Under the pieces are notes generated by a model. It had not been told where the DNA came from and did not search any database. It saw only the letters and a program-made list of their open reading frames with translations. A DNA stretch of 53,524 nucleotides from Guillardia theta CCMP2712 (lineage: Eukaryota > Protista > Cryptophyta): assembly GCF_000315625.1 (NCBI RefSeq), contig NW_005434642.1, positions 647,744 to 701,267 on the forward strand. Reading direction: 5' to 3'. The translations under genes were made by a program, and so were the position numbers. Positions 2,641 to 45,197 of this stretch are shown piece by piece (position 1 is the first letter of the stretch; every line of letters begins with the position of its first letter).

Positions 2641-3296
2641 CCCTGCGCTCCCTCGCCGCTCCTCCCCTGTGTGCATTTTTAGTTGTAAGCTCGTTGCTTC
2701 GCAATGCTGCAAGAGCGTACACAGCGAATTCTTCATTGTATCCTCACATTCATTGATAGATCTCAATGTGTACGTATGGCCCTCTTTTCGCGCCCTCTTT
2801 ACTTTTTTAGATGTAGACTATCAGCAACAGATCTGTCTCTGTTGCAATAGAGGAACCCATTCTCTTTGGTAGCATCTTCTTCCTTTTATTTTGTCATATC
2901 TTCCATCGAATCACCATATCTCACATCTTGCGATGTCTCATTGATTTTTGTTTGCGCATGCCTCATATCGTGATAGCTGTACTGGCCCGAACGTTACACC
3001 TGAGGGAGGACATTTTTGTATTTCCTTGTATGGTCTTTTTGTCGAGGCCGAACGTGCTGTTACGAATGTGAACGATTTCTTATAGTTGCCCTGCAGATTC
3101 CCGCAAGCGATATGACAAGGTGTGTCTGAAATCTAGTGTGGAACGAAGCACAGCAGCATTCCACAGGTGGCATTTCAGCCCCGAATGAAAAGCATTACTA
3201 TCACTTGCATCATATGAAGGATTCTACAGTGACCTGGTTTTACTGGAGCTGAAGTGGAACAGGGATCACGGTCCTGATTACTGAGCTATTTCAGGA

Positions 3297-6200
3297 ATGA
3301 GCAGCAACAGCGTGGTGCAACGACCCAACTATAGCCATGCAACTCACATAGCGGCACGTGATGAATGTGCAGACAAGTATCTTGGAAATGCTGTGAGCAC
3401 CAACATTGTGCGTTCGAATCATTGTCTTCCGGATGATGTTGGTAAAGAACACCTGCATGATGGGGACAGGGATAGAGACTCTCATGGTCACTCGTCGGAC
3501 CTCAGTGACGACGAGGTTGCAAACATTCGTGATGAGAACGATGATGATCAGAACACTGTTCGCGTCGACAAAATTATGGCGTTGGTATCGAGAGAGAAAG
3601 AATACAACGTGTTAGTAGGATGGCCAGACAGAAACGAAGAGGCTTTCTTGCGTGGAAAGCCCGAGCTCAAATCTTTGATCCTTGATGCTACTTCATTTGA
3701 TGAAGATGATCTTTTACATCTCACTTTGGAAATTTTCTTGGAAGTCGGTGTTCACGAGAAGCTTGGTATTCCCACGGATAAGATGAAAAGATTCATTTTG
3801 GGAGTGCGGGATAGAATGCTTGATAATCCATACCATAACTGGACTCATGTTTTTGATGTGATGCAAACAGTGTACAGCCTTGCAACAATGTGCCGTGCTT
3901 TTGATAAGTTGTCAGACATTCAAACCTTTGCCTTGATTGTGTCGGCTCTTTGCCACGATTTAGAGCACCCAGGTGTTAACAATCTCTTCCTGATCAAGTC
4001 AAGATCTTCTTTGGCAACACTGTACAACGAAACCTCTATCTTAGAGAAGCACCATGCATTTCGTGCTTTTGAGCTGATGTTTCATGCAAATACAGATCTG
4101 TTGTCCAGCTTTACCCCGGAACAATATGCAGACTTTCGTGAAATAATGATGAGCATCATTCTTGCAACCGACATGGCTCGACATGGAGATTACATGGCTC
4201 GTTTGAAGCAAATTTTGGCTGAAAACGAGGGTAAAGAAGGTCAAATCGAAGTGGATGAACTCTTTCTTATGGAGATCATCATCAAGTGCGCAGACACTGC
4301 TAATGTGCTCAAGCCATTCGAAGTTGCAAAGAAGTGGGCTCTGAGAGTAACAGATGAATTTTTCCTGCAAGGGGATATGGAAAGAGCTAGTGGAATGGAA
4401 GTCACGCCTATTTGCGATAGAACTTCTCAAAGCAGGGTGGCTGTACAGAAAGGCTTCATCGATTTTGTGATCACACCATTTTACACCTTGGTTGGCAACT
4501 TGCTGCCGGACTTGCTGGAGTGTTTCAAACAAATTCAAATTAACCGTCAAGCCTGGGATGCATATGATGACGCCATGTTGGTTGAAGAGGTGGGGAAACA
4601 CAAGTCGGGATTGCTCCCGAGCAATGGTGAGCCGGTTTCTCTCAGGATAGTAACATGGAACATAGCTGCAGTGAACAATAACCCGTTTGAATACTGGATC
4701 ACACATGGTCAAACCAGGCAGAGCGCAGACTATGCAAGTTTGATGCAAGAGGTACAGCTATTAATCGACAATCCGGAAGGACGGGACTTTGAAATTAAGG
4801 ATATAATTTCCGACGAAATGGTGGCAGAAGTCAAGGCGGAGATGGAATCATTTGGATTGGAGGGTCTGGACGAGTGGGAGAACAGGTGGAAGACAGAATA
4901 TAAGCATCGTTTAGCAATCAGCGGCTTTTTGAAGGACAAAGCAATTGGAAGCAAGCGCTTGATATCTATGCCTGACAGAGTTACGAATACCATCAACAGC
5001 GAGGGCTCAGTCTTGATGCGACCTTCGGTGATATCCATGTTTGATGGAGATTGTATGGGCTCGTTAGATGAATGGTGGGTGACATGGAAGGACTACATGT
5101 TTCATCGTCAAGTCAAGATCATCGACAGAAACAAACCTGGAGTTTCCAATGAGTTGTTTGTCATCGAGATGCTTCAAAAAATCGCTCACTCTAAATACCC
5201 CGCGATCACTGAGGAAGAAGAAGCCATTTCTATTCCACTACAAGTATGTTTTGTGCGTTTTCTTATTCATTGCTGATTTTTCGTAATCAGGTGATTGTGC
5301 TTGCCGTCTTTGATGCAATTTTAATTCATATTCTGAATTCGCTTGCTCCCACGACCTGGCAGCCAATCAAACGCTCTCTTTGCCAGGCCTTCAATCAAAA
5401 CAAAAGTCTACAGGTTGTTATGCTCTTGTTTTGTCCGGCTGCATTGCAAATCATTGCCACATTTTCGGTGTTGACATAGCTGGTAGGTGTTATCCATACT
5501 GAAGAATACCTACTCGGACGTGGATGTATTCTTCATTCAAGAAGCAGCGGCCGGATTTGTAGATGCTGCAAAACAGGTTATGGGAAGGAAGTACATGGTG
5601 ATGAGGCCCTATCTTCTTGATGGTAATGCAACTCAATTCTCAAGCCTGAATTGAAATTGACTTCTGCACAAAGGATTTCGAAATCAGAACAGCATCATTC
5701 TAGCCTCTCGCGAATTCTTCGTCGAAGGAAGTACGGAACATGTTATTCGCCTTGCCGGGGGAGGGAAATGGATCGCTCCAGGCGATCTCTGTGCAATGAC
5801 CATGAAGGCAAGTGCAAGGGACTGTTCTGAACTGTGTGAGGTAAAATTGCCTTGTTAGGGAGTAGACGGGTTTCGATATCTTCTTGCCTCCTTCCATGGC
5901 GACACCAACGGCTTGGCTTCGCTGCCTGTGTTGAAGGTCAAGATGGCTTGCACGCATGAGCCAAGTCTCACTTTAGCGCAGGCCTTGCACGAAGCAATCA
6001 CAACATCATATCCAGGTCTCGTTGAACGCTATGATGATACTGTAGTGCAGCGGAGCTCATGATATCTGCACAGATCATGTCTTCATATGTGGCATCGACG
6101 CCAACACACACAAGGTAAACCAGAGCCCTTGCTAACAATGCGCATGAGTGACCGTGGCGGCAGCAACACGGGTCCAACTGTCAGGGAGTGAATCACTTCC

Positions 6201-6724
6201 ATGACGCCTTCGCCGAGATGGGGATGGACTCCTGCTGGGGTGAGCTGCTGAAGAGGTGTGGAGGAGACAGAAGCTGACAGCAGACTTGATGCAGGAGAAA
6301 CCCCCAGTGTCAAGACTTGGACGACGAGGAACGCAAGGACTTACCTCCAGCCTCAGCTGCAGAAGGCTGTTGGCATCGCGGATGCAGCTCGAAAGGTGAG
6401 ATGGAAGGGATAGACGGGTGTTGAGATGACTCCCATGTACAGGGCGATGTAAACTTGAAAGACTGGTTGATCTTCTATGAAAATCAGGCAAGGGTTCTTT
6501 CTTTTCTTGACAACTTGGCTTGCCATTGGAGTGACTCTTCCTTCAGTTTGTTTGCGCTGAGCAAGCTCGCGACAACACGGGTGCTCGCAACTTTGATGAG
6601 GTCTGAGGTTGGTGTGGCTGTAGCTGGTGGCTCACTCCTTACCCAGGAAATGGTTTTCCCGACGCTTCAATTTCCCTCCGATCATGCGATCGTATCTGCT
6701 TTACTCACTCGCAAGCCTTCATGA
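3297..6724 (+). CDS. Class I 3',5'-cyclic nucleotide phosphodiesterase fused to a C-terminal EEP (exo/endonuclease/phosphatase) domain
   Basis: PDE motifs YHNWTHVFDV, HDLEHPGVNN, LATDMARH, CADTAN, EFFLQGDME, QKGFIDF. EEP motifs TWNI, FFIQE, SFHGDTNG, GIDANT, DWLIFY, FPSDH. Hand-spliced exons: 3297-5243, 5291-5413, 5487-5622, 5674-5807, 5859-5936, 5982-6015, 6074-6114, 6164-6239, 6295-6395, 6443-6487, 6547-6580, 6624-6724. An acceptor at 3294 suggests an upstream exon or UTR intron. Confidence 0.9.
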
Positions 6725-8511
6725 GCACTTGGTCCATCTCAACTTAATGAATTGCTACAAATCTGAGTCTCGCAGGCCGCCGCATCCCGAAGGTATTTAA
6801 CCAGTTCAATATAGAAAGTTCAACGGTTCAAGTCGCGGTTTGGGGGACAGCCGCCGCTCGGCCCGGCGGGTGACCGTAGGCTAGCCCCTGCCCAGCCGAG
6901 CCGCCGGCCGTCGCCGGGTTCTCAGTTCGGGCCGCCGTTCAAGCTGTCACGAGTCAGCCGGGCTCTCTGCTTTCCTAACTAGAAAGTCCCATCAACGCCT
7001 GCAGCCGCTCTAGTGCGCCCCGGGCCCGGCCTGCCGCTTAGTGCTGCCACGGGCCGCCCGGCCCGGCGGCCCGCTCAGCGGCCCGTGGCTACCCTTGGAG
7101 GCTCCCGGCAAATTCCGAAGTTCGGTGAGAATGACGCGGGTCACAGTCCTGGCATAAACTATCATAACGTCCAATCAACAAAATTTTGGAGTAATCATTT
7201 TCCATGATGAGCCGCGCCGCTACCGGGACATCAACATTGAACAGTGAGACAAAAGCCACTTTTCCTTTGTACGGTGAAAATTTCAACGGCGAGTCCTGGG
7301 GCCGGGCAAAAACCCAGGCAGCGGCTACACATCGGAACTCCGGCGAACGCTGGGCCCGGAGTCCCGGAGTCCAACTCGCCAGTGGCACTGAGCAGCCCGG
7401 CCCCTTGCGGCCACGCCGGCCGGCGGCCGGCGTGACCGCGCCGGCGACGCCGGGTACACCGTGACTCGACACGGTCACGGACACTCAGTGAACTCAACTT
7501 AGCTCGGAGGCTGCACCAATTCTTTACTCAAAGTTAAGTAAAACATCAGTACGAGGACAATCAGGAAGCCGCTACGGTTACAGACTCTGAGGCTGGCTTG
7601 AAGATCACGCGGTGGAAGATATTACTCGATTTAAAACGATACTCATTCTTACCTCTTCGTCATCAATGTGAAAAGACTCAATTTCGCTGAGTCATCCATG
7701 AGAATCTCGGGTTGCTAAAAACAACTTGTAAGAGTAATGGTTTTGAAGAATCCTTCTTGTTTACGTTTGGATTTGTTCAACGCAACGTTTCAAGATGGCG
7801 GGCTGAACCCCCGAGAAGAAGAGGAAAAAGACGCCATCTGACAACTGCATGACCGGCGCGAAAAATGAACGATGTGGGCGTCTGGGAAGTGAAGAGGCGG
7901 GGGGAAGGGAGGAGGAGGGGAAGGCACAGAAGGACGATGCATGGAGCTACTGTACAAGAGGAGAGGACAGAGTAAGACTCTAGCGCTGAACACGACAGTA
8001 CGCGTGAAGAGGAGGGGGAATGTTGCCGGGTATCAGGAGGGGCCGGAAAGGCCATGGAGGAGAGCAGGAGGGGGCAGTGCATAGGGAAGGGACGAGAAGG
8101 CGGGAGGTTGGAGAGCATAGGAGTAGCCAAATATGACCAGTGAGTTAGTGCAGTAGGTGCAAGAGTTTGGTCCCTTCTACTTAGTAGCACAAGAGAGAGA
8201 TGTTTGAAAAAGGAAACCAAACTGATGTCTGATTGTACAGGAACGAAGAACAAAAAATACATCAACGCAACTCCATCAACTGGATTATTTATGGGAACAC
8301 CGACTTGTTGAGACACAAGAGGCCATCGTCGACAACAGAGCGAGAGTGTGAGAGAGGAAGGAGGTGGTGGTGGAGGTAGACGGAGTACAGACAGTGAGTA
8401 GGGTGTAGACGAGCTTCAGCGGTGACTGGCTCGAGAGCGAGGTGTAACAACATCAAGGATAGCAGCTAGTTGCTATCATTGCCCATGTGCTGAAGGCCTG
8501 CTGGAGCAACC

Positions 8512-13428: not shown

Positions 13429-13501
13429 CATCATCACCATCACCATCATCATCATCATCATCATCATCATAATCATAATCATCATCATCATCACCATCAC
13501 C

Positions 13502-13532
<31 letters not shown>

Positions 13533-16500
13533 CCACCACCACCATCATCATCATCATCACCACCACCACCACCACCACCACCACCATACGTTGCCTCCTC
13601 TTCCTGCTTGTCCTCCTCCACCACCACCATATCCTCCCCCTCCTCCTCTCTGTCCGCCTTCTGCTTCCCTTCAGTTTCCTCTCATCGTCACTTGTCTCTG
13701 CCTTCTCCTCTCGTCTCTCCTCGTGCTGAGGTCATCTGAAGACCAGGGAAGCAATCTGGCAGGGAAATTTTTCCAGGTAACGCAGGGAAAACATGAGCAT
13801 GAGGGAAAGAAGGAGAGGAGACGAGAGGAGAGAAAAACATGAGGAGCAGCGGCAGGAAGCAGGAGCAGGCAGGAAGTCTTAGGAGCATGCAGGCGAGTCT
13901 CCTGCCCTACCTGGCGTTTCTCTACTTCCTCAACAACAACGGGGCGAAAACACCCAAACTATCAGGATTCGGCTTCGGGGTAGATCTCTCCTCCTCCTTC
14001 TCTCTTTCCTTCTCCCTCCCCCTCCTCCTCCCCCTCCCCCTCCCCCTCCCCCTCTATCTCCCCCTCCCCCTCCTCCTCCCCCTCCCCATCTCTCTCCCCC
14101 TCTCCCTCCTCTTTCTATTCCTCTTCCCCTTCCTCTTTCTCTTCCTCTTCCTCTTTCTCTTTCTCTTTCTCTTTCTCTTTCTCTTTCTCTATACTCTCTC
14201 TCCTTCTGCTCTCCTCCTCCTCCTTTCTCTCTCTCTCTCTCTCTTGCTTCTTAAATTTTGCTTCAGTTTCTCCTCCTCTTCGTCATCGCCACCATACCTA
14301 CAGGCATCATCTCTAAGACGGTGAGAAAGCAGCAGCAGCAGCAGCAGTCTTTGATGTGCCTGCAGGTCTACGGAGTCTCACTAGCAGATGTTGACTGGCT
14401 GCATGGAAGTGCCGAAGCACTTTTAACGGTAAACGAGGGGGGGGGGAGGAGAGAAGGGAGGAGAGAGAGAGAGAGAGAGAGAGGAGGAGGAGGAGGGAGA
14501 TACAGAGAGGGAGAATAAGGAGGGGATCAGGAGGAGGAGATGAACAGGAAGGAGCACAAGAAATGATCAAGGCTTAGGTCACAAATATTCTCATCGCGGT
14601 TGGCTTTCGGGATGCGATGAGCTCAGGGACAGCTGAGGGTGAGAGAGGAACGTTGAAAATCGTTGGTAAGAAAGCAGAGCATCGTTCCTCCTCTCCTCTC
14701 CTCTCCTCTCCTCTCCTCTCCTCTCCTCTCCTCTCCTCTCCTCTCCTCTCCTCTCCTCTCCTCTCCTATCCTATCCTATCCTATTCTCTCCTCTCCTCTC
14801 CTCTTCTCGCCCTTGTTCCATTACTCCTGCCTCATCTTGCTGCGTTTCTTCTTGCATTTGCTCTTCCTCTCCCTCTCTGACTCTTCTCAGCCATCGCGAT
14901 TGCTGCTCTTGTTGCTGGTGCTGCAGCTATTGGAAGTCCAGTGCTCGGTTTCGAAGCTCATACGCCATTCTTGGTACCTTTCGTTCCTCCCCTCCCCTCC
15001 CCCTCCCCCTCTCCTTCCTCTTCTCTCCTCTCCCTCCCTCCCTCTTTCATCGTTTTTGGCATCACCACCACCTCTCTACGCATCATCACCACCACCACCA
15101 CCACCACCACCTCCTCCTCCTCCTCCACCACCTCCACCTCCTCCTCCTCCTCCTCCACTGTTTCGTTTCTTCCTCCTCCTGACTCCCTCAGGCCGGCCTT
15201 GGCGATCTTCCTTCAAACTTCTTCGCAAGCATGGGAGCTGCCTCTGGTCATCATCCTCCCTTGAACCTTTCCAACCCTCCTGCTATCACCACTCCTCCTC
15301 CTCCTCCTCCTTCCTCTCCCTCCTCCTTCCTCCCCTCCATCCTCCTTCCTTCGTCGCTCTCGCTTTTCACCGCTCCTTCTCCCCTGCCTTCTCCTCCATG
15401 ACCTCCTTAGTTCTCATCTCACCCTCACTGCTTCCTCTTATCGTGCCTCATGCTTCTCACTTGATCGGGTAGAGCCTGCAAATGCTCTTAGCATCCCAAC
15501 TTGGGCGATTCACTTCTCTTCCGTCTTTGAGGTGCCTTCGCCTTCCCTTCCCTCCCTCCCTCCTCCCTCCTCCCTCCTCCCTCCTCCCTCCTCCCTCCTC
15601 CCTCCTCCCTCCTCCCGCCTTTTCTCACCTACTCTCTCAGTGGATCTTTGCGATGCGTCTCGTCTGGGACTATGCCGACGCTTCGAAGGTGAAAATCTCT
15701 TCCACCTGTCCATCCCCATCCTACCTTCTCATCCACCTCCCCACGCTTCGACTTCGCCTCTCCCCTAACATCTTCACCCCCTTCTCCCTCCTCCTTGTTT
15801 CCTTCTGTACCCCAACTCATCTGCTTTCTCTGCTTCGTCTCCCTTCCCTTTGAGTCCCTTGTACTTGAACTGCTTCCCCCCATCTTCTTCGCCTTCTTCC
15901 TCCTCCTTCCTCTCGCCTTCTTCCTCATCCTGCTTCTTGGCATCCAAACTCATCCTTCATGCAGGACCAGACGTGGAAGGGCCTTACATGGGGCATGCTT
16001 CCCTTGCATGCGAGGTATGGCGACACTTGAGCACTGACAACTTCTTTCCTCCTCCTCCTCCATTCCTCCTCTCCACTCCTTCTTTTCACTCGATTCCCGG
16101 CTCTCGTTGTCTACGCGCACTCATCGTTTCTTCCCTTTCAGCGGCGTTGCTGCCTGTACCTATCACTTCTTTTACAACAACCCTGGTATACCTTCCTCAC
16201 AGTCCCCTCCTCTGCCCTATCCGATCTTCTCCTCCTCTTTACCTGCTCCTAACCTCGACATTTGCTTTGGTTCCTCCTATTCCATCTTCTCACTCCTTCC
16301 TCCCTTCTCTCTTGCTCTTTGCCCTCCTCCCTCCGTTTCATTTTCGTTCTCACAAGTGACGGAGCAGATCTTTCCTTTCTTGTTGCCTTGCAAGCTGGAC
16401 TGACAGTGAGAAGATGCAGAATGTTTCACCTCTGACTGACTTTGCTCCTGCCTCCCCCCCCATCCCCCGTCCTCCTCCTCCTCCTCTCTCCTCCTCCTCC

Positions 16501-17446
16501 TCCTCTCTCCTCCTCCTCCTCCTCTCTCCTCCTCCGATTTCAGTGCCTTGGAAACTTTACTGTTGCCATTGCTGCAGCAAGAATCGCACTCGCCAACGGC
16601 TGGAAGGTATGGGCATGCGTGAACGAGGCGAGATTGAGGGGAGTGGGGAGGAGGAACAGGAGGATGGGGAGACGATGGAGTGGGTGGGGCTGACGGATGT
16701 CTCAGGTGCCTTTCTTCTCCTCCACAGGTTTTCTGCGATCTCTCCTCTCACCCTCTTCCCCTCCCCTATCCGCTCTCTTCCTCTCTTGACCTCGCTGCCC
16801 TCGGTTACCATACCCTACCCACCTCATCTTCTCTTCTCTCGTCTCACTCCAATCTTCCTCGCCTTCTCCGTTGACCCTCACAGTCTGAATCTTCTCTTAC
16901 CTGCTCCTATCGATGACGATGTGGCAGAGGCTGCATCACAGCAAGGAGATGAGAAGAAGCAGTTTCTCGAAGTGAGCTTTCCTTCCCCTGCTCCAACCTG
17001 CTCTCTATCATCCTTCCCGTTCGCCTGTCCTCGCACCTCATCCTTCTTCTCTTCGCCTCTACACAACTTTCTCTTGTTCTCCTTGCTGACAGTCGTTCAG
17101 TCAAAGCCTCCCCAGGAGAGCGACACCATGCTCATCGCCAAGCTTGCCGGCTTGACTGTCACCTCTGCGTATCTGGTGATTGACCTGCTACCTCCTCGTG
17201 CGCTCCTGCTGTCTGTCCTCCCACTACTTGTCTCTATGCTCACATCTTACCATCTTCACGCAGGTCAAGTACGGCGAGCTTTTCCTCTCCCTTCCCTTCC
17301 AGGCCAACGCAGTCGCCGCCATCGCCATGGCAAGTTTCTTGCCCAAGGCGTGAGTGGCCTTACGATTCTCGCAGGTCGCTACTCCCCCGGCTCTTCTCGC
17401 CTCTTTCTACTTGCAGAAGGCGGCGGCAGCACAGGAAGCAGCGTAG
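12860..17446 (+). CDS. DUF3593 + DUF2499 (Ycf49-like) multi-pass membrane protein, probably plastid-targeted
   Basis: Spliced fragments NLAGKFFQ/ASLLPYLAFLYFL, FVIATIPTGII, YGVSLADVDWLHGSAEALLT/VTNILIAVGFR (DUF3593). ANALSIPTWAIHFSSVFE/WIFAMRLVW, WKGLTWGMLPLHA, GVAACTYHFFYN, LVALQAGLT/LGNFT (DUF2499). C-terminal VKYGELFL...AAAAQEAA*. Signal-like LFLLLLAVSCHAFAF at ~12885-12926; start codon unresolved. Confidence 0.8.
13378..13586. repeat. Compound (CAT)n/(CAC)n intronic microsatellite
   Basis: About 200 bp of CAT/CAC triplets; source of spurious poly-His/Asp/Met ORFs. Confidence 0.95.
14686..14802. repeat. (CTCCT)n pentanucleotide intronic repeat (second copy at ~13012-13077)
   Basis: Directly visible. 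Confidence 0.95.
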
Positions 17447-17605: not shown

Positions 17606-19259
17606 TCACTGCTGCGAGCATGCTTTCTTCTTCTTGTCGCGCACGTCCTTGCTCTGCCACAGAACATCAGTCACGCATGACCAGCACAAGACATCCTTAC
17701 ATCCGAGGCATTGGTTGAAGCTCCCTTGCGCTCCGGTTGCGATGTGCGCGTCGGGGACGCGTGGCGGGTGCCTGAGCTGCTTGACGAGCTCTCCTTGCTC
17801 GGCGTGGGTGAGGAGCTTGCAGCAGTCGCTCCATCGGCCTCAAAAGGTGCTGCAGCGCGTCTTACTCGCGCCTGTGACACACGATCAGAATCTTGTTGTG
17901 CTGCAGAACCTTGTGCTCACCTGTCCAATCTGAGCTAGACGAGTTTTGAGGATAGGGAATCTCTCCATAACAGCTTCAAAGTCTGATCTCATCAGTCGGA
18001 ACAACTCGACAGCCTCCACAGGCTTGTTTGTGTTCTTAGGTCCACTTCCTGCTCCCAACGATTTGACATCTGCTGTCCTCTGCTTCGACACGGTGAGAGC
18101 AACTTCACCGAAGAAGTCACCTGCACAAGAAGCGTCAGCACATATACTTGGGCATCCAAAGCCACAAATCACCTGTTGTAAGACGATCCACAGTGTTGCC
18201 GTTAACAAGAATTTCCACCGATCCAGAATTAATGAAGTACATGCAATCACCTACTTCACCCGCCTGAATAACAGGCTTTCCATACTCAATCTTAATCAGC
18301 TGCAATTTCTGCGTAACTTCCTGAAGACAAGCAGGATCGATGTTGTCGAAGATAGGCAACTTTCTGATAAGCAAGAATGCACGATGAGAGCTATGCAGCT
18401 TCTTGGCTGAGGCTTCACCAGCATTCTGGATCCACGGATGATCCAAGCACTGCTGTGCGGAGTACCTCTTGGCGGGATCAACAACCAACATCTTGGACAC
18501 CAGATCTTTCGCTTCTTCTGAAACACCATCCCAATAAGGCGATGGAAATGTATACTCCCCCTTGCGAATTTGTTTAAATAATACTGCTGTAGAATCGTCG
18601 TAAAATGGAGGGAAACCGCAAAGCATGATGTAGAGAACCACTCCCAGAGACCAGAGATCAACCTCAGGGCCATAACCATTTGTGAAAGGAAGGTACGGAT
18701 CCAAAACCTCAGGCGCTACATACCCTGGAGTTCCACAAGTGGTCTTCATCTGGGAATTCTCCGACACAAATTTCGATAGACCAAAATCTGCAACTTTGAT
18801 CGTATTGTAATCAGGTGAGCTCGGATCATTGGAAGCATAAAGAAGGTTCTCAGGTTTCAAATCGCGGTGAGTGATTCCAATGCTGTGCAAATAATGTACT
18901 GCATTGAGAACGTCTGCGGTCACAGAAGCGGCATCCTTTTCAGAGAAATGATCAATAGCGATAATGCGGTCCATGACCGTTCCCCCTGTGATAAGATCCA
19001 GAATCAAATAAGTTTTGTTCGCTTCATCATAAACTTCGTGCAGCAGGACGCAGTTGGGGTGTGAAACCTTTTTCATCGTGGCTATTTCCTGCTCCAGTGA
19101 TTCGGCATCAAAAACAGCATCCTTCTTATCAACGATCTTAATGGCAACCCGAGTTCGGCTAGCCTTGTGAATCCCTTCTTTAACAACCGCAAAGGATCCT
19201 TTTCCTATGGTTTTCCCGATTTCATAGGATTTGTGGACTCCTTTTGATAGGATACCCAT
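17606..19259 (-). CDS. CaMK1-like Ser/Thr kinase with C-terminal cyclic-nucleotide-binding domain and polybasic CaaX tail
   Basis: GKGSFAVV, VAIK, HRDLKPEN, DFG, CGTPGYVAPE, GFPPF. CNB motifs GEVGDCMYFINSGSVE and FFGEVAL...RTADV. Exons 19259-18173, 18120-17921, 17871-17701, 17653-17606, ending DKKKKACSQQ*. Confidence 0.9.
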
Positions 19260-21660
19260 CTTAGGCAACGGTGTTCAGATACTTGAGACACCTCAAACAC
19301 CCGACGATGGTAATCCTCTCTGGAGCAAAGACAAACACGTTCCTAAGCCCAATCGACCTCTCCTGGCTTCAATGGGATACTTCCTGCTACGCCAGGCAAA
19401 TACGTCAGTGAAGGCAAGAAAATTCATTTATCCACAATACTAGAATGAAGTGTCGAAAGGCAATCTAATCTCCCTTAAATCAAATCTCGCTTGAAATAGC
19501 ACATCAAATCATTACTGCTGCTTAGCTGAAAAATATGCTTCGCATATCAGCAAGCTTGCAACCAAAAGAAACACAGAACACAAAGCAGGCCCAAAGATAC
19601 AAAAACGTCATTGCCCGTCAAAGCATTTCAGCAAGTCACATGCGTGTTCGCTGAAATGATCAGATTCAAAAAGCAACCAATCGATGACTACTGTCCCATA
19701 GCAAGTAACCCCATCACATTGCATCACGTAAGCTACTTGCAATGCAGCTTCTGCGTGAGTTCCAAGATCAAATGAAGAACACGATAATGGAAAAAGATCT
19801 TTTCAATGAGAAGGTGCGTTGAAGCAGTCAAGCATTGAACGAGTTCATGACAAGTTGCGATGACAAGAAGGTACAGAGGACAAGCCGGCTTAAGTGTTGG
19901 AGCACAGATGTCATGAGGGAGAAGGCAAACAAACCAGGAAAGGAAGGGAGAGGAGAGCAAATGAGCGCTGAGAAACGAAATGAGAGTCAAAACACATCAA
20001 GCCAAACAAACGCGGATGAGGAACTGCATTGAGAGCATCCCTTCGCCACGCCATTGCCGCGACGCGGAAGGTTGGCGTGTGACTCGGCCAAGCACCAATG
20101 GAGCTTGATCGGTACGTGGGGTGGGTCCTTTTCAGGTATTTACCGGGGTAGAATTCGTAATTTTTGGTGATCAGGTTCTCTTGAGCAGGTGGGTACTGGG
20201 GATACACCGGTGTACATCTCCATTGGAGGGTCCTGCAAAGCAAAATACACCTAATGAGGTGGGGTACTGTTGCAGGGTGACTTCAACACCTCGATCAGAT
20301 TGTATTGTTTTGAGGGGTAGGTTGTTGAGAATTCATAAGGTAGGGTACCTATCCCAAGGGACGTTGGCGTACAAAATCGCCATGGAGCGTGTCTAAACTT
20401 AGATGGCTGAAGCACACGAATATCTGAGTAACTGAGTCTAAATGTGGTTTACATATTTCAAATATAAAGAAAACATTTGAGTATTTGATGGTATATTGGG
20501 AGTAATATCCAAATGAATACGCCAAATCTTGAATCGATGTAGAATGGGTGCGACTTCAGATCAGATTTGTGGGTGGGTGGTTTCATATCTTGGGGTGGGT
20601 GTTTTGAACGCCGACATGGGGTGGTCATACCCGATCGCCCCACCCCACAGGCAGACCGGGGAGTTCAAGATCTTTGTGGGGGTGAGTGATACTTTACAAA
20701 CCCTGTGGATAGGGTATTTTGCTTTGAGGGTACTTAACCCTAGGGGTAGGGCTCCTTCTTGTCTCGAACACGTGGGGTCCTTAAGCCCCATAGGGGTCAA
20801 AGAGACCGTAGCGGATGTAGCGAGCAAGGGGTACCAAAAGGTAAAGTAATGTGATGCGCAGGGTAAAGTAGGGTAGGGTAGGGTGATGGAGGGTGGGGTA
20901 GGGTAGGGTAAGATATTTCACCAGCAAGATGATTGTGAGAAGATAAACGGGGTTGATTTGGGGGTGGTGAGGTAAGGGGGTAGGGTATTAATCGTCTTCC
21001 AATTAAAGAAAAGATGGGTAAAGGGAGGGTAGCCAAGCCTGTCCAGGGGTTTTAATTACAGTGATACCCTTATGGATAAAATTGGGGTAGGGTACTGGAG
21101 GGTTTTGGGGGGAGCAGGTGGGTGAGATGTGAAAGGGGGGGTCATCGGCGAGAGATGGTGGGGGTTGTCCCATTCATGCAATTAATAATAAGACGGATTA
21201 TAAATCTACAATCATATTGTAAATGTATTAGCCATACCTCATTTCTATTCGTTGTAAATTGGTTTAACTGCTGGCCGCGCTGTGCGTACTGCGGTGATCT
21301 GAGGCGGGTCTATCGTAATGTAGTCGTCGATGAGTAATAATTTTGGCCATGAGTGTGTTTCGAGAGGAGCAGGGGCAGGAGCAGGAGCAGGTGAAGCAAG
21401 ACCAGGATCAGGAGCAGGAGGAGCAGCAGGAGCAGCAGGAGCAGCAGGAGCAGCAGGAGAAAATCATGTGCAAAAGGGGGATGGTGATGTGACATGGAAG
21501 TCGACCGTCCTTGCTCTTCTTGACGAATGACGTAAGGTTTTGACATTTAGAAGTTAAGGGATACAGACGTTAAGAAGGACCAGGCTGCGTGTAAGCTTCC
21601 TTGGTGTAGACGGCGGAGGAAGGGGAGGAAGTTGAAGAGCCTTGGAAAGAGAGGGTCGGT

Positions 21661-24909: not shown

Positions 24910-27733
24910 TTAGCTTTGCTTGCTTTGCGAGTCCGAGCTGGTGTCTGAGTGAGGCAAGGGAGGGTCGACAGTGAGCAGCTGAGAGAGGCTCGAGCTTTGA
25001 GGCCCCCGTATCCCCTGCCTGCCGCTCCTGCTGTAGTCGAAGTGAGTCTTGGGGGGCACGAAGACAAGGTCGTCGATCAGAGCTGGGTCCTGCACGCGAG
25101 GATCATTACAGGACAGCGACATGCTTCTGTGCCGCAGCATCGCGGAAGAGTCTCTGCTCCTGCTGCTCGTCTTGACAGGTGCAGACGTCGGTTTCGAGGC
25201 TGACTCAGGCGTCTTGCTCTCAGCAAAGGATTTCGATCGACTGCGATGGACGAACGTGCTGGAAGGCACTCGATTGATCACTTGCTGTTGCGCTCTTGAG
25301 TCGACGAGTCTCGAAGAGTCCTCAAAAGTTCCGCTCGCCTTGTCCTGGTCTTGTTCTGCCGGTGGCTCCAAGACTGCTGCATGCAGAAGCTTGGCCGCTG
25401 GGATCGGGCCGAGAGAGGGCGGGAGAGGCTCCGGAGCAGACGGCACTTGGGGGTTGTGGGAGAGGCTGCGAGTCACCTTGACGTCTTTGGTTGCCTGTTG
25501 GCTGTTGAGGAGAATTTTCCTGCCGATTGCTGCATCAGCTTGCGATGGGGCTGGTTGACTGGAAACTCCTAGTTGAGTGCCTGGGGGAGGGTCAAAGGGG
25601 AGCACATGGTCTGGTTTGAGACTGACTCACCTAGGACCTTCTCAAGGGACTGAGTGAAGGACTTGAAATCTTGTCTCAGCGCCTTCACGTCAGCTTCGAT
25701 CGATCTCAGGCGAAAGTCGTTCTCGTCCTCAACTATCTGACTGACGTGAATGAACTCTTCCTTGCTGATTTGATGATCCTTGTCAGAGTCCAGCCGCGCA
25801 ATCACGAGTGGATGGAGAGAAGGAGGAATGCCCAGCAGCTCCAGAGCTTCCTTGGCTTCATTCAGGTCCAACACGCCATTCTCGTCCTGGTCGACCTGAT
25901 GAAAGATATCGAGGACTCTGCCCGTGCCTCTGTTTGAGTAGCCCCACGAGTTGATTATATCTGACTGCTGTGCCGCCTGCATCGCAAGCAACTTCATCAT
26001 CAGAAACAGCGCAGAGAACTCCTTGCTCGACGTCTCTGCCATCGCATTCGACATCTTCCTCAAAGCGTATCGACGAAGCTCTTCTTTCATGATCTCTTGG
26101 AACTGATCACGGCTGAACTCGCCGTTGCTGTTGCAATGCCTTCCTCCTTCTGTCAGAAACTCGAAGTCGTCCTGCAGGATGTGGATCGGCGAAGAGGTCG
26201 GAAGCTGCTTGAGGCCTCGCTGGAACTCCTCGAAGTTGAGGCCACCAGACCCGTCCTTGTCCAACCGCTCGTAGGTCTCCGAGATGCGCTGCGTTAGATC
26301 CCTTTCGTTGACGAACAAGGCAAGATGAGCTGAGAGAGGATCGAGCACGCTCTTGGAGCGACGTAGCTCCTTCTCCTTCTCCTCTTGCTCTCGCTTCTCA
26401 GTCTCTATCTGAAGCTTCTCGGCTTGAATCGAGGTGATGAATTCATCCAGCAGCACCGCCACAACCACGTTGATGAGGAAAACTCCAGCGATGAGCACGT
26501 AGCTCACGAAGAAGAAAGAGGTCCAGTAGTCGAATTGAGTCTTCATCTCCGGTCCGTCGAAGATCGACCGTGTTACTGCAGAGGCCCAGCTGCATGATCA
26601 TCGTCAGTGCTGAAAGGCGCGGTCTCAGTCAAAGTTGATCGTTACCTGTCTCCTGTGACAACTTGAAACATCTGCGATACCCCAGCAAGGTCAGAACCGA
26701 TTAGGATAAGTGATTGTGTCACCGTGAAGAGCGATCTCGAGAAGGTTCCGAAGAAAGCTTCACTTCTTGCGGAGAAGAAGTGAGTTCCGAGAGCGGCCCA
26801 AATACAAGTAACAAGAGCGAGGATGATGAAGCTGTTGGCAACAGGAATGACGGCAGAGGCCAGGGCTGTGATGATTCTGTTGAGAGATTTCAACTTGCGG
26901 AAGACTCGAGCGACTCGGAAGACTCGGATAAGTCGAAACACTTTGAGCGAGGGAATCCCCGACGCAAGAACCGTCAGCAGCGACAAGCTGACAATGATTA
27001 CATCCAGGAGATTCCATCCATCAGATAAAAACTCCTTGCACCAGTTCTTGGACTTAGCAAACAAGTTGACAGCGAGTTCGAAGCAGAAAACAGAGGCAAA
27101 GAAGATGTCCATCTGATCAAAGAGGTTTTGAGTTGGACTGCCATCTTCTGGCAGAATCTCTGCTTGCACAAGATCCATAGCAAAGCTCGCCATGATGAGG
27201 CTTGCAATTACAGTCTGAGTTATTGAATTCTCATAAGCGCGCTTAACACGCAGTCTCCACAGTGCCAACGGTCCTTTTTCAGTTCTGTTCGCCTCTTCTT
27301 GCACCCAACGTGCATGTTTCGATTCCCTTTCAATGGCTTCCGACCATTTGCCAGCATCTGTACGGAGTGCTCTATGAATATAGGCTCTGCCGCTATTGAA
27401 TCCGTCAGGAATAGTCTCAATGATGATTTCCTGGTAGTCATCGTTGCTTTCGTCTTCATCCTCTTGCAGAAAGACCTTGTTGATCTCGTGCAAGGGGATG
27501 TGATCGATGATCAAGTCTGTCGAAGGGTTCGCGAAGTACAAGCACTCCTGCGTCAAGACGGCCAGTCGCGGCATCCATGTGATGGTGGAGCCGACGCGTT
27601 TCTTATCGATGAGTCCTTCTCTGATCCGCGAGGACTCAGGTGGCAGCGTGAAACTTTTTGCCATGTCTTCGGGCACTACATTCTCGTGAACGATGTGCCC
27701 TGCATTTCGTATCGCGGAGATGGCTGCTGCCAT
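24910..27733 (-). CDS. Single-domain voltage-gated cation channel (EukCat/BacNav-like) with N-terminal PH domain and C-terminal EF-hands
   Basis: PH-like IREGLIDKK...WMPRLAVLT...IIDHIPL...KWSEAI. S3 DGWNLLDVIIV; S4 LKVFRLIRVFRVARVFRKLK; pore FTMFQVVTGDSWAS; S6 FLINVVVAVLLDEF. EF loops DKDGSGGLNFEE, DQDENGVLDLNE, DSDKDHQISKEE. Exons 27733-26723, 26671-26646, 26589-25631, 25568-24910. Confidence 0.9.
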
Positions 27734-28714
27734 GATGAGGGATCTGAGAGGAGGATATGTTAGTTTCAGCCATTTCATGCCATTGAAACAAACTAGTTGC
27801 CATGCGACTGAAGCACAAGCATCTGACATGCACATACAACAACTATGCTTATTCAAGCTTTACGCAAGCATGTAAATAATCTGATTCGAACCTGTATGGT
27901 GGCCGATGTTAACAAGAGAACGGATGATGATCAGAGACAATGCATCACAGCAACAGCGCCTTTACGATCACCGTGAACAATCGTACTGTTCTCTTCCTAA
28001 ACTACGCATGCCGCCGCGCTCTGGTCAATTGCTGAGAGCCACCCCCCATCTTTTTGACTTGTGAACCCCCTATTCCCCTGACTACCCCCTCGTTCCCCAC
28101 AGAGTACCTCTGCGAAGCGTAACTTTCAGCCTTCCACCCACCCACCCGGTGACCCACCTACGACGCAAGCTGCAAGGAGCTGACCACCCCTGCAAGACTC
28201 CAATAACCCACCGGTCATGCTAGAACCTTTTCGCACCCCATGATCCATTTGTTAACTTTCGCAAAGGGCCCGGGGGTATTCTAGACTACCTTGTTGTCCC
28301 GGGGTCGGTACCCTACAGGCTGTTGGATCACGGTAGCTCGGATACAGAGGGGTGTAAAGTGGGGGGTCACCGATCTACAACCCCACCCCCCACCCCCCCT
28401 ATGCTTTACACGTTAAATTTTTCTTCGGATTGCTTTACTTTTGCCCAGTTTTTGTACCAACAACCGGACCACCCCCTCGCTTCCCCGATAAATCACCCCT
28501 CTCCTCATGCCTATCAACCACCCCCTTTCGTCCATGTGACGATTGCACACTACCAACCGTCATGGACCCGGCCGTACCCGCCTGCTGCGGGCCCGGGCCG
28601 CGGGGCCCCGGCGGCCGGGCGGGTCGGCCGTCACAAGTTGAATGCTAATCGGACTGACTCCCTCAGTGAGCAACTTGAAGCAAATCGGCAAGTTACGTGA
28701 CTCACTGGCGACAG

Positions 28715-45100: not shown

Positions 45101-45197
45101 TGGGACAGGCTTTACATGCGCGTCCGTTGGGCGAGGAAAGGACACCTCGAGCGCGTGGGAGTTTGAGGACGAAGCGTTTGAAAATTGTTATGGATGA
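39174..45197 (+). CDS. Signal peptide/Cys-rich module + PP2C phosphatase + TPR-like region + Ser/Thr kinase fusion (plant At3g63330/At3g63340-like)
   Basis: PP2C: QGRRVTQED, VFDGHGG, VGDCRA, LAVSRAIGD, GSDGLWD, RGSHD. Kinase: GAGKFGEV, FILKR, SGLREIHFG, HRDLKPEN, DFGSA, YAPPEV, YDMWSVG, SRDPL..GLPNIWA. TPR-like SLAQAHEAVGDAEGAIRSYK and LARLGELHLALGDFRESLQ. Confidence 0.8.
42700..42841. repeat. 14-bp intronic minisatellite (GATGAAGGAAAG[C/T]A) ~x10
   Basis: Directly visible. Confidence 0.95.
42931..43005. repeat. 25-bp tandem repeat x3
   Basis: GAGCCGGAGCAGTCAGG(G/A)GCTTGAT repeated three times. Confidence 0.95.

What the first reader, a model, noticed from the sequence alone, without database searches (positions are those of the whole stretch)
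3297..6724. Cyclic-nucleotide PDE fused to an intact EEP hydrolase
Seen: the PDE catalytic domain runs directly into LRIVTWNIAAVNNNPFEYW within one exon, so the fusion is not a splicing artefact. Eleven downstream exons supply the remaining EEP motifs (IQE, FHGD, GIDAN, D-WLIF, PSDH). Known: class I PDEs normally pair with N-terminal GAF, PAS or CaM-binding regulators, and EEP enzymes include PDE12, nocturnin, CCR4 and inositol 5-phosphatases. Inference: a two-active-site enzyme, either relaying cNMP to NMP to nucleoside or coupling two second-messenger pools. I do not recall this architecture being described.
Basis: partly seen in the sequence, partly recalled or inferred. Interest (0 to 1): 0.78.

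Follow-up and report, generated by a model that had tools for sequence, protein, structure and literature searches.

The report
Cyclic-nucleotide phosphodiesterase fused to orphan hydrolase
One expressed gene of the cryptophyte alga Guillardia theta joins a cAMP/cGMP-degrading enzyme to a second, intact phosphate-ester hydrolase of an uncharacterised algal family, a pairing kept across cryptophytes, hidden by the public gene models, and found in no paper I could search.

Summary
Window 3297-6724 (+) is one 12-exon gene whose spliced product is identical to a 948-aa transcriptome protein (P0001). Transcript contigs from two studies remove all 11 introns.

Exon 1 alone carries a complete class I PDE domain (Pfam PF00233, E 5.5e-80). 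It also carries the first strand and motif (WNIAAVNNNPFEYW) of the second domain.

The C-terminal 500 aa fold with high confidence (pLDDT 91) as an EEP hydrolase. VIA-align Z is 22 to nocturnin, TDP2, CNOT6L, PDE12 and ANGEL2, and about 15 to inositol 5-phosphatases. All catalytic residues are in place. A conserved 230-aa insert matches no solved fold. By sequence the domain belongs to DUF8234 (PF26695), which is uncharacterised.

The fusion, always PDE then EEP, occurs in Guillardia, Hanusia, Geminigera, Rhodomonas and Hemiselmis, and in unnamed marine contigs. I saw it only in cryptophytes. The public Guillardia models split the gene into a 313-aa PDE piece and a 441-aa EEP piece, so the fusion is hidden there.

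No searched paper mentions the architecture or the DUF. What the EEP domain cleaves is unknown, so a relay (cNMP to NMP to nucleoside) and a two-messenger role both remain untested. The scan notes shown to me hold no earlier report of this architecture. Verdict: a new variant of a known kind, of moderate interest.

The parts
3100..6766 (+). Transcribed region seen in RNA contigs. The 5' UTR reaches at least 3100 and the X3 contig runs on further upstream. The 3' UTR is 6725-6766 and ends in poly(A).
   Evidence: tables 5, 7, 8; in-frame stop at 3282-3284 just upstream of the ATG, read
3297..5243 (+). Exon 1, aa 1-649: acidic N-terminal tail, the whole PDE domain, the linker, EEP strand 1 and most of the insert
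3831..4535 (+). Class I PDE catalytic domain as Pfam matches it (aa 179-413). The structural core aligned to PDE9A is aa 129-430, which is 3681-4586.
3954..3983 (+). PDE signature HDLEHPGVNN (aa 220-229). Other PDE residues: H180 and H184 in YHNWTH, D292 in ATDMARH, D333 in KCAD, Q384.
4587..4637 (+). Inter-domain linker (aa 431-447), short, with E431 and G433 invariant in the orthologues
4638..4697 (+). EEP strand 1 and the family motif SLRIVTWNIAAVNNNPFEYW (aa 448-467). The catalytic Asn455 is at 4659-4661.
4665..5519 (+). DUF8234-specific insert of about 230-245 aa (aa 457-701, spanning exons 1-3 and introns 1-2). It is helical with two small sheets. Invariant motifs: KRLxSMPDRxxNxI and KYP.
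5291..5413 (+). Exon 2 (aa 650-690)
5487..5622 (+). Exon 3 (aa 691-735); the catalytic Glu709 of FFIQEAA is at 5541-5543
5674..5807 (+). Exon 4 (aa 736-780), holds the NQNS motif and is followed by a GC-AG intron
5859..5936 (+). Exon 5 (aa 781-806); SFHGDTNG with His793 at 5895-5897 and Asp795 at 5901-5903
5982..6015 (+). Exon 6 (aa 807-817)
6074..6114 (+). Exon 7 (aa 818-831); GIDANTH with Asp826 at 6097-6099 and Asn828 at 6103-6105
6164..6239 (+). Exon 8 (aa 832-856). Its start was corrected from 6185 to 6164 by the transcript.
6295..6395 (+). Exon 9 (aa 857-890); motif TTRNARTYLQPQLQKA
6443..6487 (+). Exon 10 (aa 891-905); KDWLIF with Asp897; followed by a GC-AG intron
6547..6600 (+). Exon 11 (aa 906-923); RDNTG motif
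6647..6724 (+). Exon 12 (aa 924-948 plus the stop); PSDH with Asp935 at 6680-6682 and His936 at 6683-6685

Best explanation
One expressed 12-exon gene of Guillardia theta encodes a 948-residue protein with no signal peptide or membrane segment and with two complete hydrolase active sites. The N-terminal one is a class I 3',5'-cyclic-nucleotide phosphodiesterase. About 17 residues later comes a metal-dependent EEP-fold phosphoesterase of the uncharacterised family DUF8234 (PF26695). Its core is interrupted after strand 1 by a conserved 230-residue insert that matches no solved fold.

Shown here: the gene structure, the transcript, both domains, the fold, the conserved catalytic residues, and conservation of the fusion through cryptophytes.

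Inferred: both domains are active. The PDE opens cAMP and/or cGMP to the 5'-NMP. The EEP domain cleaves a second phosphate ester on a nucleotide-type substrate. That substrate is either the 5'-NMP product (giving nucleoside plus phosphate) or another nucleotide-derived messenger. One polypeptide would then carry out two successive steps, or switch off two signals, at one place in the cell.
For: Gene and transcript:
- The spliced translation is identical to P0001.
- All 11 introns are removed in transcript contigs of two studies, with poly(A) at about 6766.

PDE domain:
- PF00233, E 5.5e-80.
- Alignment to PDE9A, TbrPDEB1 and PDE4D at E 1e-50 to 1e-56, with the HD signature, metal ligands and purine-clamp Gln present.

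EEP domain:
- AF2 model with pLDDT 91.4 and pTM 0.90.
- VIA-align Z 22.2-21.1 (rmsd about 3 A, 229-254 residues) to nocturnin 6bt1, TDP2 4fpv, CNOT6L 3ngn, PDE12 4zkf and ANGEL2 6rw0. Foldseek E 6e-10, probability 1.00.
- N455, H793 and D795 are invariant, and E709, D826, N828, D935 and H936 are at least 90% conserved, in 40 family members. They sit at predicted strand ends.

Conservation of the fusion:
All have the order PDE then EEP, with 7-16 residues between the matched domain ends.
- Named sources are Guillardia, Hanusia phi, Geminigera cryophila, Rhodomonas, and Hemiselmis andersenii and rufescens.
- Both active sites are conserved in the orthologue alignment, and the linker has invariant residues.
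- The EEP parts of 9 fusions form one clade, SH-aLRT 98.

Nucleotide-type substrate: this rests only on the best structural neighbours all being nucleotide or nucleic-acid phosphoesterases, and on the PDE partner.
Against: - No activity was measured for either domain.
- Structural ties among EEP branches are weak guides to substrate. Neutral sphingomyelinase scores Z 20 and AP endonucleases Z 19, only 2-3 below the top.
- About 41% of stand-alone DUF8234 proteins with an N-terminal extension carry one hydrophobic anchor with a positively charged N-flank. That suggests a luminal or surface catalytic domain, a setting unlike a cytosolic cNMP pathway.
- A 5'-nucleotidase activity has, to my knowledge, no precedent among EEP enzymes.
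- The docking test of the two domains gave no verdict.
- One orthologue (P0007) has lost the second His and an Asp of the YHNWTHxFD motif, so the PDE site is not kept everywhere.
Confidence: 0.55

Rival explanations
1. Two-pathway enzyme with a lipid or inositol substrate. The PDE degrades cNMP. The EEP domain acts like a sphingomyelinase, a phospholipase C or an inositol-phosphate phosphatase, and so couples cyclic-nucleotide signalling to lipid or inositol signalling.
For: - Human neutral sphingomyelinase 8j2f scores Z 20.0, close to the top tie.
- Many stand-alone family members are membrane-anchored, which fits a membrane-bound substrate.
- The insert carries invariant Lys and Arg residues (K553, R554, R561, R575) that could bind anionic head groups.
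Against: - Inositol 5-phosphatases are the weakest EEP matches (Z 14-16).
- The 5-phosphatase signature motifs, recalled from my own knowledge, are not in the sequence.
- The fused protein has no membrane segment (sequence).
Confidence: 0.22
2. Only one domain is a working enzyme. The other serves as a regulatory, ligand-binding or targeting module, for example an EEP domain that binds a metabolite and gates the PDE, which has no N-terminal GAF, PAS or CaM module of its own.
For: - No regulatory domain is found N-terminal of the PDE.
- The short linker with invariant residues suggests a fixed arrangement of the two domains.
- Orthologue P0007 has lost PDE metal-site residues, which shows that one site can decay.
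Against: - Every canonical EEP catalytic residue, and the PDE residues, are kept in the Guillardia protein and in nearly all orthologues. Pseudo-enzymes usually lose them.
Confidence: 0.1
3. The fusion is an artefact: a chimeric assembly or a read-through of two neighbouring genes. The cell would then make two separate proteins, as the public annotation implies.
For: Public Guillardia models are separate. One is a 313-aa PDE piece (P0296 = aa 94-406). The other is a 441-aa EEP piece (P0121, XP_005833126.1 = aa 508-948).
Against: - The junction lies inside one uninterrupted exon with no stop.
- The public EEP model starts at an internal Met and lacks strand 1 and the catalytic Asn, so it cannot be a complete EEP domain.
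- Independent transcript contigs span the junction.
- The same junction is present in five other cryptophyte genera.
Confidence: 0.02

Closest known systems
Class I cyclic-nucleotide phosphodiesterase catalytic domains (human PDE9A, PDE4D; trypanosomatid PDEB1)
   Same: Full-length PF00233 match. About 300 residues align to PDE9A. The HD signature, metal ligands and purine-clamp Gln are present.
   Different: The PDE sits at the N-terminal side with no GAF, PAS, CaM-binding, REC or FYVE module ahead of it. It is followed by a second catalytic domain. Substrate preference (cAMP or cGMP) cannot be read from the near-equal matches to cGMP- and cAMP-specific enzymes.
DUF8234 (PF26695) stand-alone proteins of algae, e.g. 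the Guillardia paralogue P0118 (519 aa) and Aureococcus anophagefferens JL722_3756
   Same: 41-50% identity over the whole 500-aa domain, with the same insert and the same invariant motifs. Guillardia has three further loci of the family.
   Different: The stand-alone proteins have no PDE. Many carry a single N-terminal hydrophobic anchor at the place where the PDE sits in the fusion. None has a described function.
Nocturnin, CCR4-type deadenylase CNOT6L, PDE12, ANGEL2 and TDP2 (EEP enzymes acting on nucleotides or nucleic acids)
   Same: Best structural matches, Z 21-22 over 229-254 residues. Same order of catalytic residues at the strand ends.
   Different: Only 11-18% identity. No relation detectable by sequence, even with a family profile. 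None of them has the 230-aa insert after strand 1, which has no PDB match (best Z 3.7).
Bacterial CpdB/UshA-type bifunctional 2',3'-cyclic-nucleotide phosphodiesterase/3'-nucleotidase (from my own knowledge, not tested here)
   Same: A precedent for one polypeptide that first opens a cyclic nucleotide and then removes the phosphate from the product.
   Different: Different folds (calcineurin-like metallophosphoesterase plus a 5'-nucleotidase C-terminal domain), periplasmic location, and action on 2',3'- rather than 3',5'-cyclic nucleotides.
Other modular PDEs of protists: rhodopsin-PDE of choanoflagellates (PMC7644710, title and abstract as listed) and the cyclase-CNB-PDE fusion noted by this scan in the same genome (s1-443914, unchecked)
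   Same: A class I PDE catalytic domain recombined with an unusual partner in a unicellular eukaryote.
   Different: In those proteins the partner is a sensor or the opposing enzyme, and lies N-terminal. Here the partner is a second hydrolase of unknown substrate, and lies C-terminal.

Membership tests
Class I 3',5'-cyclic-nucleotide phosphodiesterase (PF00233) | Pfam model matched above its gathering score over its full length | tested here: met
   268.9 bits against a cut-off of 24.8; profile positions 1-238 of 238; aa 179-413
Class I 3',5'-cyclic-nucleotide phosphodiesterase (PF00233) | Signature H-D-x-x-H-x-[AG]-x-x-[NQ], plus the metal-binding His and Asp residues and the general-acid His | tested here: met
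   HDLEHPGVNN at aa 220-229. H180 and H184, D292 and D333 align to the PDE9A residues. H180, H220, D221, H224, D292 and D333 are invariant in 9 orthologues. H184 is lost in one orthologue, P0007.
Class I 3',5'-cyclic-nucleotide phosphodiesterase (PF00233) | Invariant purine-clamping glutamine | tested here: met
   Q384 in VQKGF, invariant in the orthologues
Class I 3',5'-cyclic-nucleotide phosphodiesterase (PF00233) | Hydrolysis of cAMP and/or cGMP to the 5'-NMP | not testable with these tools
   Needs an enzyme assay
EEP (endonuclease/exonuclease/phosphatase) superfamily | Four-layer alpha/beta sandwich fold | tested here: met
   Model pLDDT 91.4. Z 22 to five EEP enzymes, and 38 chains with Z of 8 or more, all EEP. 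Foldseek probability 1.00.
EEP (endonuclease/exonuclease/phosphatase) superfamily | Catalytic set Asn (strand 1), Glu (strand 2), His/Asp, Asp-x-Asn, and Asp-His before the last strand | tested here: met
   N455, E709, H793/D795, D826/N828 and D935/H936 lie at predicted strand ends. They are invariant or at least 90% conserved in 40 family members. Residue-by-residue superposition on a solved EEP enzyme was not available.
EEP (endonuclease/exonuclease/phosphatase) superfamily | Match to Pfam PF03372 above its gathering score | tested here: not met
   No hit for P0001. Orthologue P0004 reaches 17.8 bits and relative P0110 19.1 bits against a cut-off of 24.5. Only the triple-domain P0152 passes, at 26.4 bits. 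The family is therefore an outlier that is filed separately.
DUF8234 (PF26695) | Pfam PF26695 match | tested here: met
   Precomputed PF26695.1 on P0001 and on all close relatives. Atlas clusters are 93-100% PF26695 DUF8234 at scores 0.97-0.98. The local Pfam copy lacks this model, so I could not rescore it.
DUF8234 (PF26695) | Family-specific motif after strand 1 (NNNPFEYW) and the conserved insert of about 230 aa | tested here: met
   N460-Y466 are invariant. The insert aligns without large gaps in 39 members at 43-68% identity.
Nocturnin / CCR4 / PDE12 / ANGEL branch of EEP | Sequence-level relationship to the branch | tested here: not met
   phmmer and a 40-sequence profile find no EEP chain in the PDB even at E 10. 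The structural Z ties with TDP2 and with Bacteroides EEP proteins.
Inositol polyphosphate 5-phosphatase | Closest structural similarity among the EEP branches | tested here: not met
   Z 14.2-15.7, the lowest of all EEP branches listed. I did not see the two 5-phosphatase signature motifs, which I recall from memory, in the sequence. The motif check rests on my own knowledge.

The most novel reading that the evidence does not exclude
DUF8234 is a new class of nucleotide-messenger hydrolase, and the cryptophyte protein is a self-contained two-step or two-signal terminator. It would either take cAMP or cGMP all the way to the nucleoside, or switch off a cyclic nucleotide together with a second nucleotide-derived messenger such as NAADP/NADP(H) or a 2',3'-cyclic nucleotide. 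The fusion would then act as a Rosetta stone that assigns a function to hundreds of orphan algal proteins.
Probability: 0.25. Interest if true: 0.75.

Novelty: new variant of a known kind. Interest (0 to 1): 0.55.

Why it matters
- **New PDE layout.** Class I PDEs are normally built as N-terminal regulator plus C-terminal catalytic domain. Here the PDE comes first and a second intact hydrolase follows, and this has been kept across cryptophyte genera. That argues for a functional link and not for chance domain shuffling.
- **A lead for an orphan family.** The partner belongs to DUF8234, which is spread through marine algae (diatoms, haptophytes, prasinophytes, pelagophytes, dinoflagellates, Paulinella). 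Of the proteins fetched here, 237 matched the EEP part alone. A fusion to a cyclic-nucleotide PDE is the first contextual clue to what the family does, and it gives a short list of substrates to test.
- **An annotation fix.** Two public Guillardia theta gene models should be merged into one 948-aa protein. As they stand, domain-architecture databases built on the reference genome miss the fusion.

Tried and rejected
Slips in my own calls:
- translated one base out of frame; discarded.
- One search had a term-syntax error and exceeded the residue limit. Neither ran.

Gene model:
- My first exon model had a wrong exon 3/4 junction, which I corrected through the upstream acceptor at 5673.
- It also had a wrong exon 8 start, which the transcript protein and the RNA joints corrected.

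Searches that found nothing:
- Sequence searches of the EEP half against the PDB, as a single sequence and as a 40-sequence profile, found no EEP chain.
- The local Pfam copy lacks PF26695 and gives no significant EEP hit for this protein.
- The look-up of encoding contigs for the public EEP model: not on record.
- The insert folded alone (pLDDT 88) matched nothing in the PDB (best Z 3.7; Foldseek nothing at E 0.001 or better). This does not prove that the fold is new.
- Literature: no hit for PF26695, DUF8234, PF00233 with PF03372, or PDEase_I with Exo_endo_phos. General searches on Guillardia or cryptophyte PDEs returned only rhodopsin and optogenetics papers and unrelated reviews.

No verdict:
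- Complex prediction of the PDE domain (aa 120-436) against the EEP domain (aa 445-948) scored 0.00. It is no evidence either way.

Other partners of DUF8234 gave no decisive clue:
- tandem triple DUF8234 (P0152);
- TPR (P0253);
- MatE in Durusdinium gene models, possibly merged genes (P0282);
- DUF952 (P0192) and a HAD_2 hydrolase (P0199) in Paulinella chromatophora transcripts.

Readings rejected:
- inositol 5-phosphatase membership (lowest Z);
- assembly chimera (the junction lies inside one exon and is shared by five other genera).

Searches used exon 1 by reference and the database protein P0001. The exons were joined only inside local scripts, to check the reading frame and to compare the translation with P0001.
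Full report
**1. What is there**

The window comes from Guillardia theta. Earlier scan notes say so. I confirmed it: the public protein that matches the 3' half of this gene is XP_005833126.1, GUITHDRAFT_152541, of G. theta CCMP2712. The window is the last 53.5 kb of the 701,267-bp contig C32.

ORF 3297-5276 on the + strand is used as exon 1 up to a GTATGT donor at 5244. Eleven short exons follow, separated by introns of 45-73 nt. Nine introns are GT-AG and two are GC-AG. They keep the frame open to the stop codon at 6722-6724.

My by-eye model needed two corrections. The intron 3 acceptor lies at 5673. Exon 8 starts at 6164. With these, the spliced translation is identical, residue for residue, to P0001, a 948-aa 'complete' ORF from a transcriptome assembly.

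I sent no joined exon sequence to any search tool. Searches used exon 1 by reference, or P0001. The exons were joined only inside local scripts, to check the frame and for that comparison.

**2. RNA evidence**

Transcript contigs of two runs from different studies (X1, X3) lie on 3138-6900 and 3100-6766. Each of the 11 introns is skipped exactly. X3 ends in a poly(A) run at about 6766.

Raw RNA-seq reads (X22, a 3'-biased library) show the last four joints in 3 to 44 reads each. A run that holds the locus unspliced (X15) shows no joints.

Contigs cannot exclude a rare isoform.

**3. The N-terminal half**

Residues 179-413 match Pfam PDEase_I end to end (E 5.5e-80). Residues 129-430 align to human PDE9A (E 2e-56). 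Trypanosomatid PDEB1 and PDE4D follow closely.

The signature HDLEHPGVNN is present. So are the His and Asp metal ligands (H184, H220, D221, D333), the general-acid His180, D292 and the purine-clamp Gln384.

Nothing recognisable precedes the catalytic domain. Residues 1-128 are acidic and poorly conserved. Preference for cAMP or cGMP cannot be read from these data.

**4. The C-terminal half**

By sequence it matches no solved structure, even with a 40-sequence profile. In my Pfam copy the generic EEP model reaches it only weakly, and only through relatives. Precomputed annotation and the ESM Atlas place it in PF26695, DUF8234.

An AlphaFold2 model of aa 440-948, built on 40 relatives, is confident (pLDDT 91.4, pTM 0.90). 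It is clearly an EEP fold.
- Z 22.2 to nocturnin and TDP2.
- Z 22.1 to CNOT6L and PDE12.
- Z 21.1 to ANGEL2.
- Z 20 to neutral sphingomyelinase.
- Z about 19 to AP endonucleases.
- Z 14-16 to inositol 5-phosphatases (Foldseek agrees).

The canonical catalytic residues sit at the ends of the predicted strands: N455, E709, H793/D795, D826/N828 and D935/H936. They are invariant or nearly so in the family.

Between strand 1 and the helix before strand 2 lies an insert of about 230 residues. It is strongly conserved, with the motifs NNNPFEYW, KRLxSMPDRxxNxI and KYP. Folded on its own it is confident (pLDDT 88). It matches nothing in the PDB (best Z 3.7).

**5. Distribution**

Among all proteins fetched, 37 carry both domains. 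All have the order PDE then EEP, with only 7-16 residues between the matched domain ends.

The named ones are all cryptophytes: Guillardia theta, Hanusia phi, Geminigera cryophila, Rhodomonas, Hemiselmis andersenii and Hemiselmis rufescens. The rest are unnamed transcriptome or marine metagenome contigs.

A full HMMER pass over 1.84 billion representatives put only this small clade on top as true fusions. The other multi-stretch hits are tandem DUF8234 or multi-PDE proteins.

In a tree of the EEP domains, nine fusions form one clade (SH-aLRT 98). That clade sits inside a wider starred group, which also holds the second Hemiselmis fusion lineage and Guillardia's own stand-alone paralogue. This fits one or two origins within cryptophytes.

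Guillardia has four DUF8234 loci, and only this one is joined to a PDE. In the orthologue alignment both active sites and parts of the linker are invariant. The exceptions are obvious assembly frameshifts, and one orthologue (P0007) that has lost two residues of the first PDE metal motif.

**6. Public annotation**

The reference genome carries two partial models on this gene. One is a 313-aa PDE piece equal to aa 94-406 (P0296). The other is a 441-aa 'hypothetical protein' equal to aa 508-948 (P0121).

Residues 407-507 are in neither model. They include the linker, EEP strand 1 and the catalytic Asn. The reference proteome therefore hides the fusion.

**7. How it probably works**

Shown: one soluble polypeptide, two complete and conserved active sites, and a short conserved tether.

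Inferred: both sites are active. The PDE opens 3',5'-cNMP. For the EEP domain the only pointers are its nearest structural neighbours, all of which are nucleotide or nucleic-acid phosphoesterases, and its partner. I therefore favour a nucleotide-type substrate (confidence 0.55 for the whole statement). I leave open whether it takes the 5'-NMP product (relay) or a second messenger (parallel).

Evidence pulling the other way:
- Sphingomyelinase is only 2 Z units behind the top matches.
- 61 of 148 stand-alone relatives with an N-terminal extension carry a single hydrophobic anchor. Their positively charged N-flank predicts a catalytic domain outside the cytosol. In the fusion the PDE occupies exactly the place of that anchor.
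- A Paulinella transcript fuses DUF8234 to a HAD-type hydrolase. This again links the family to phosphate-ester hydrolysis but does not fix the substrate.
- The docking test of the two halves gave no verdict.

**8. Novelty**

No paper in the searched library mentions PF26695 or DUF8234, the domain pair, or PDEs of cryptophytes beyond rhodopsin work.

The architecture does exist silently in automatic annotation of transcriptome proteins. I rate it a new variant of a known kind: a class I PDE with a new, catalytic, C-terminal partner. Interest is 0.55, because it is clearly real and conserved, but its function is open and odd fusions are common in this genome.

Noticed in passing
window 3576-4514 and 4818-6724: The public Guillardia theta annotation covers this one gene with two partial models: a 313-aa PDE piece (aa 94-406) and a 441-aa EEP piece starting at internal Met508. 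The models should be merged into the 948-aa protein.
   Followed up: yes
stand-alone DUF8234 proteins, e.g. P0019, P0032, P0018; L004:1288-2502 (G000 contig 22, about 93 kb): 61 of 148 stand-alone family members with an N-terminal extension have one hydrophobic segment (15-residue Kyte-Doolittle mean of 2.0 or more) some 20-50 residues from the start, with a Lys/Arg-rich N-flank. This looks like a signal anchor. One Guillardia paralogue has it too. The test was only a crude hydrophobicity scan.
   Followed up: partly
P0199 and P0192 (Paulinella chromatophora transcripts); P0152 (ENA contig); P0253; P0282 (Durusdinium trenchii): Other partners of DUF8234: a C-terminal HAD_2 hydrolase 12 residues after the domain, DUF952, three tandem DUF8234 copies in one 1681-aa protein, TPR repeats, and an N-terminal MatE transporter (possibly a merged gene model).
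   Followed up: partly
P0007 (Logan transcript, 862 aa), PDE motif YHNWTHxFD: This orthologue reads YHNWVRAFN, so it has lost the second His and the Asp of the first PDE metal motif while keeping the EEP residues. It may be a lineage in which the PDE site is decaying.
   Followed up: no
window 5808-5858 and 6488-6546: Introns 4 and 10 use GC-AG instead of GT-AG. Both are removed in the transcripts.
   Followed up: yes
window 18135-19268 (-): An ORF with a full protein-kinase domain followed by the start of a cyclic-nucleotide-binding domain, about 11 kb from the PDE gene. The scan has already reported it (s1-441254). I found no evidence of a functional link to the PDE-EEP gene.
   Followed up: no
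window 25569-27856 (-): Adjacent ORFs with EF-hands and an Ion_trans voltage-gated-channel domain. The scan has already reported them (s1-441312).
   Followed up: no
window 13500-16540: A dense run of polypyrimidine (CT-, CCT- and CTCCT-type) microsatellites on the + strand. It gives GC skew -0.46 and AT skew -0.40 over 14-16 kb.
   Followed up: partly
window 34108-35700 (+) and 44241-45197 (+): A 530-aa ORF with a DUF4214 match (E 9e-9), and a 318-aa ORF holding the C-terminal two thirds of a protein-kinase domain. Neither was examined further.
   Followed up: no
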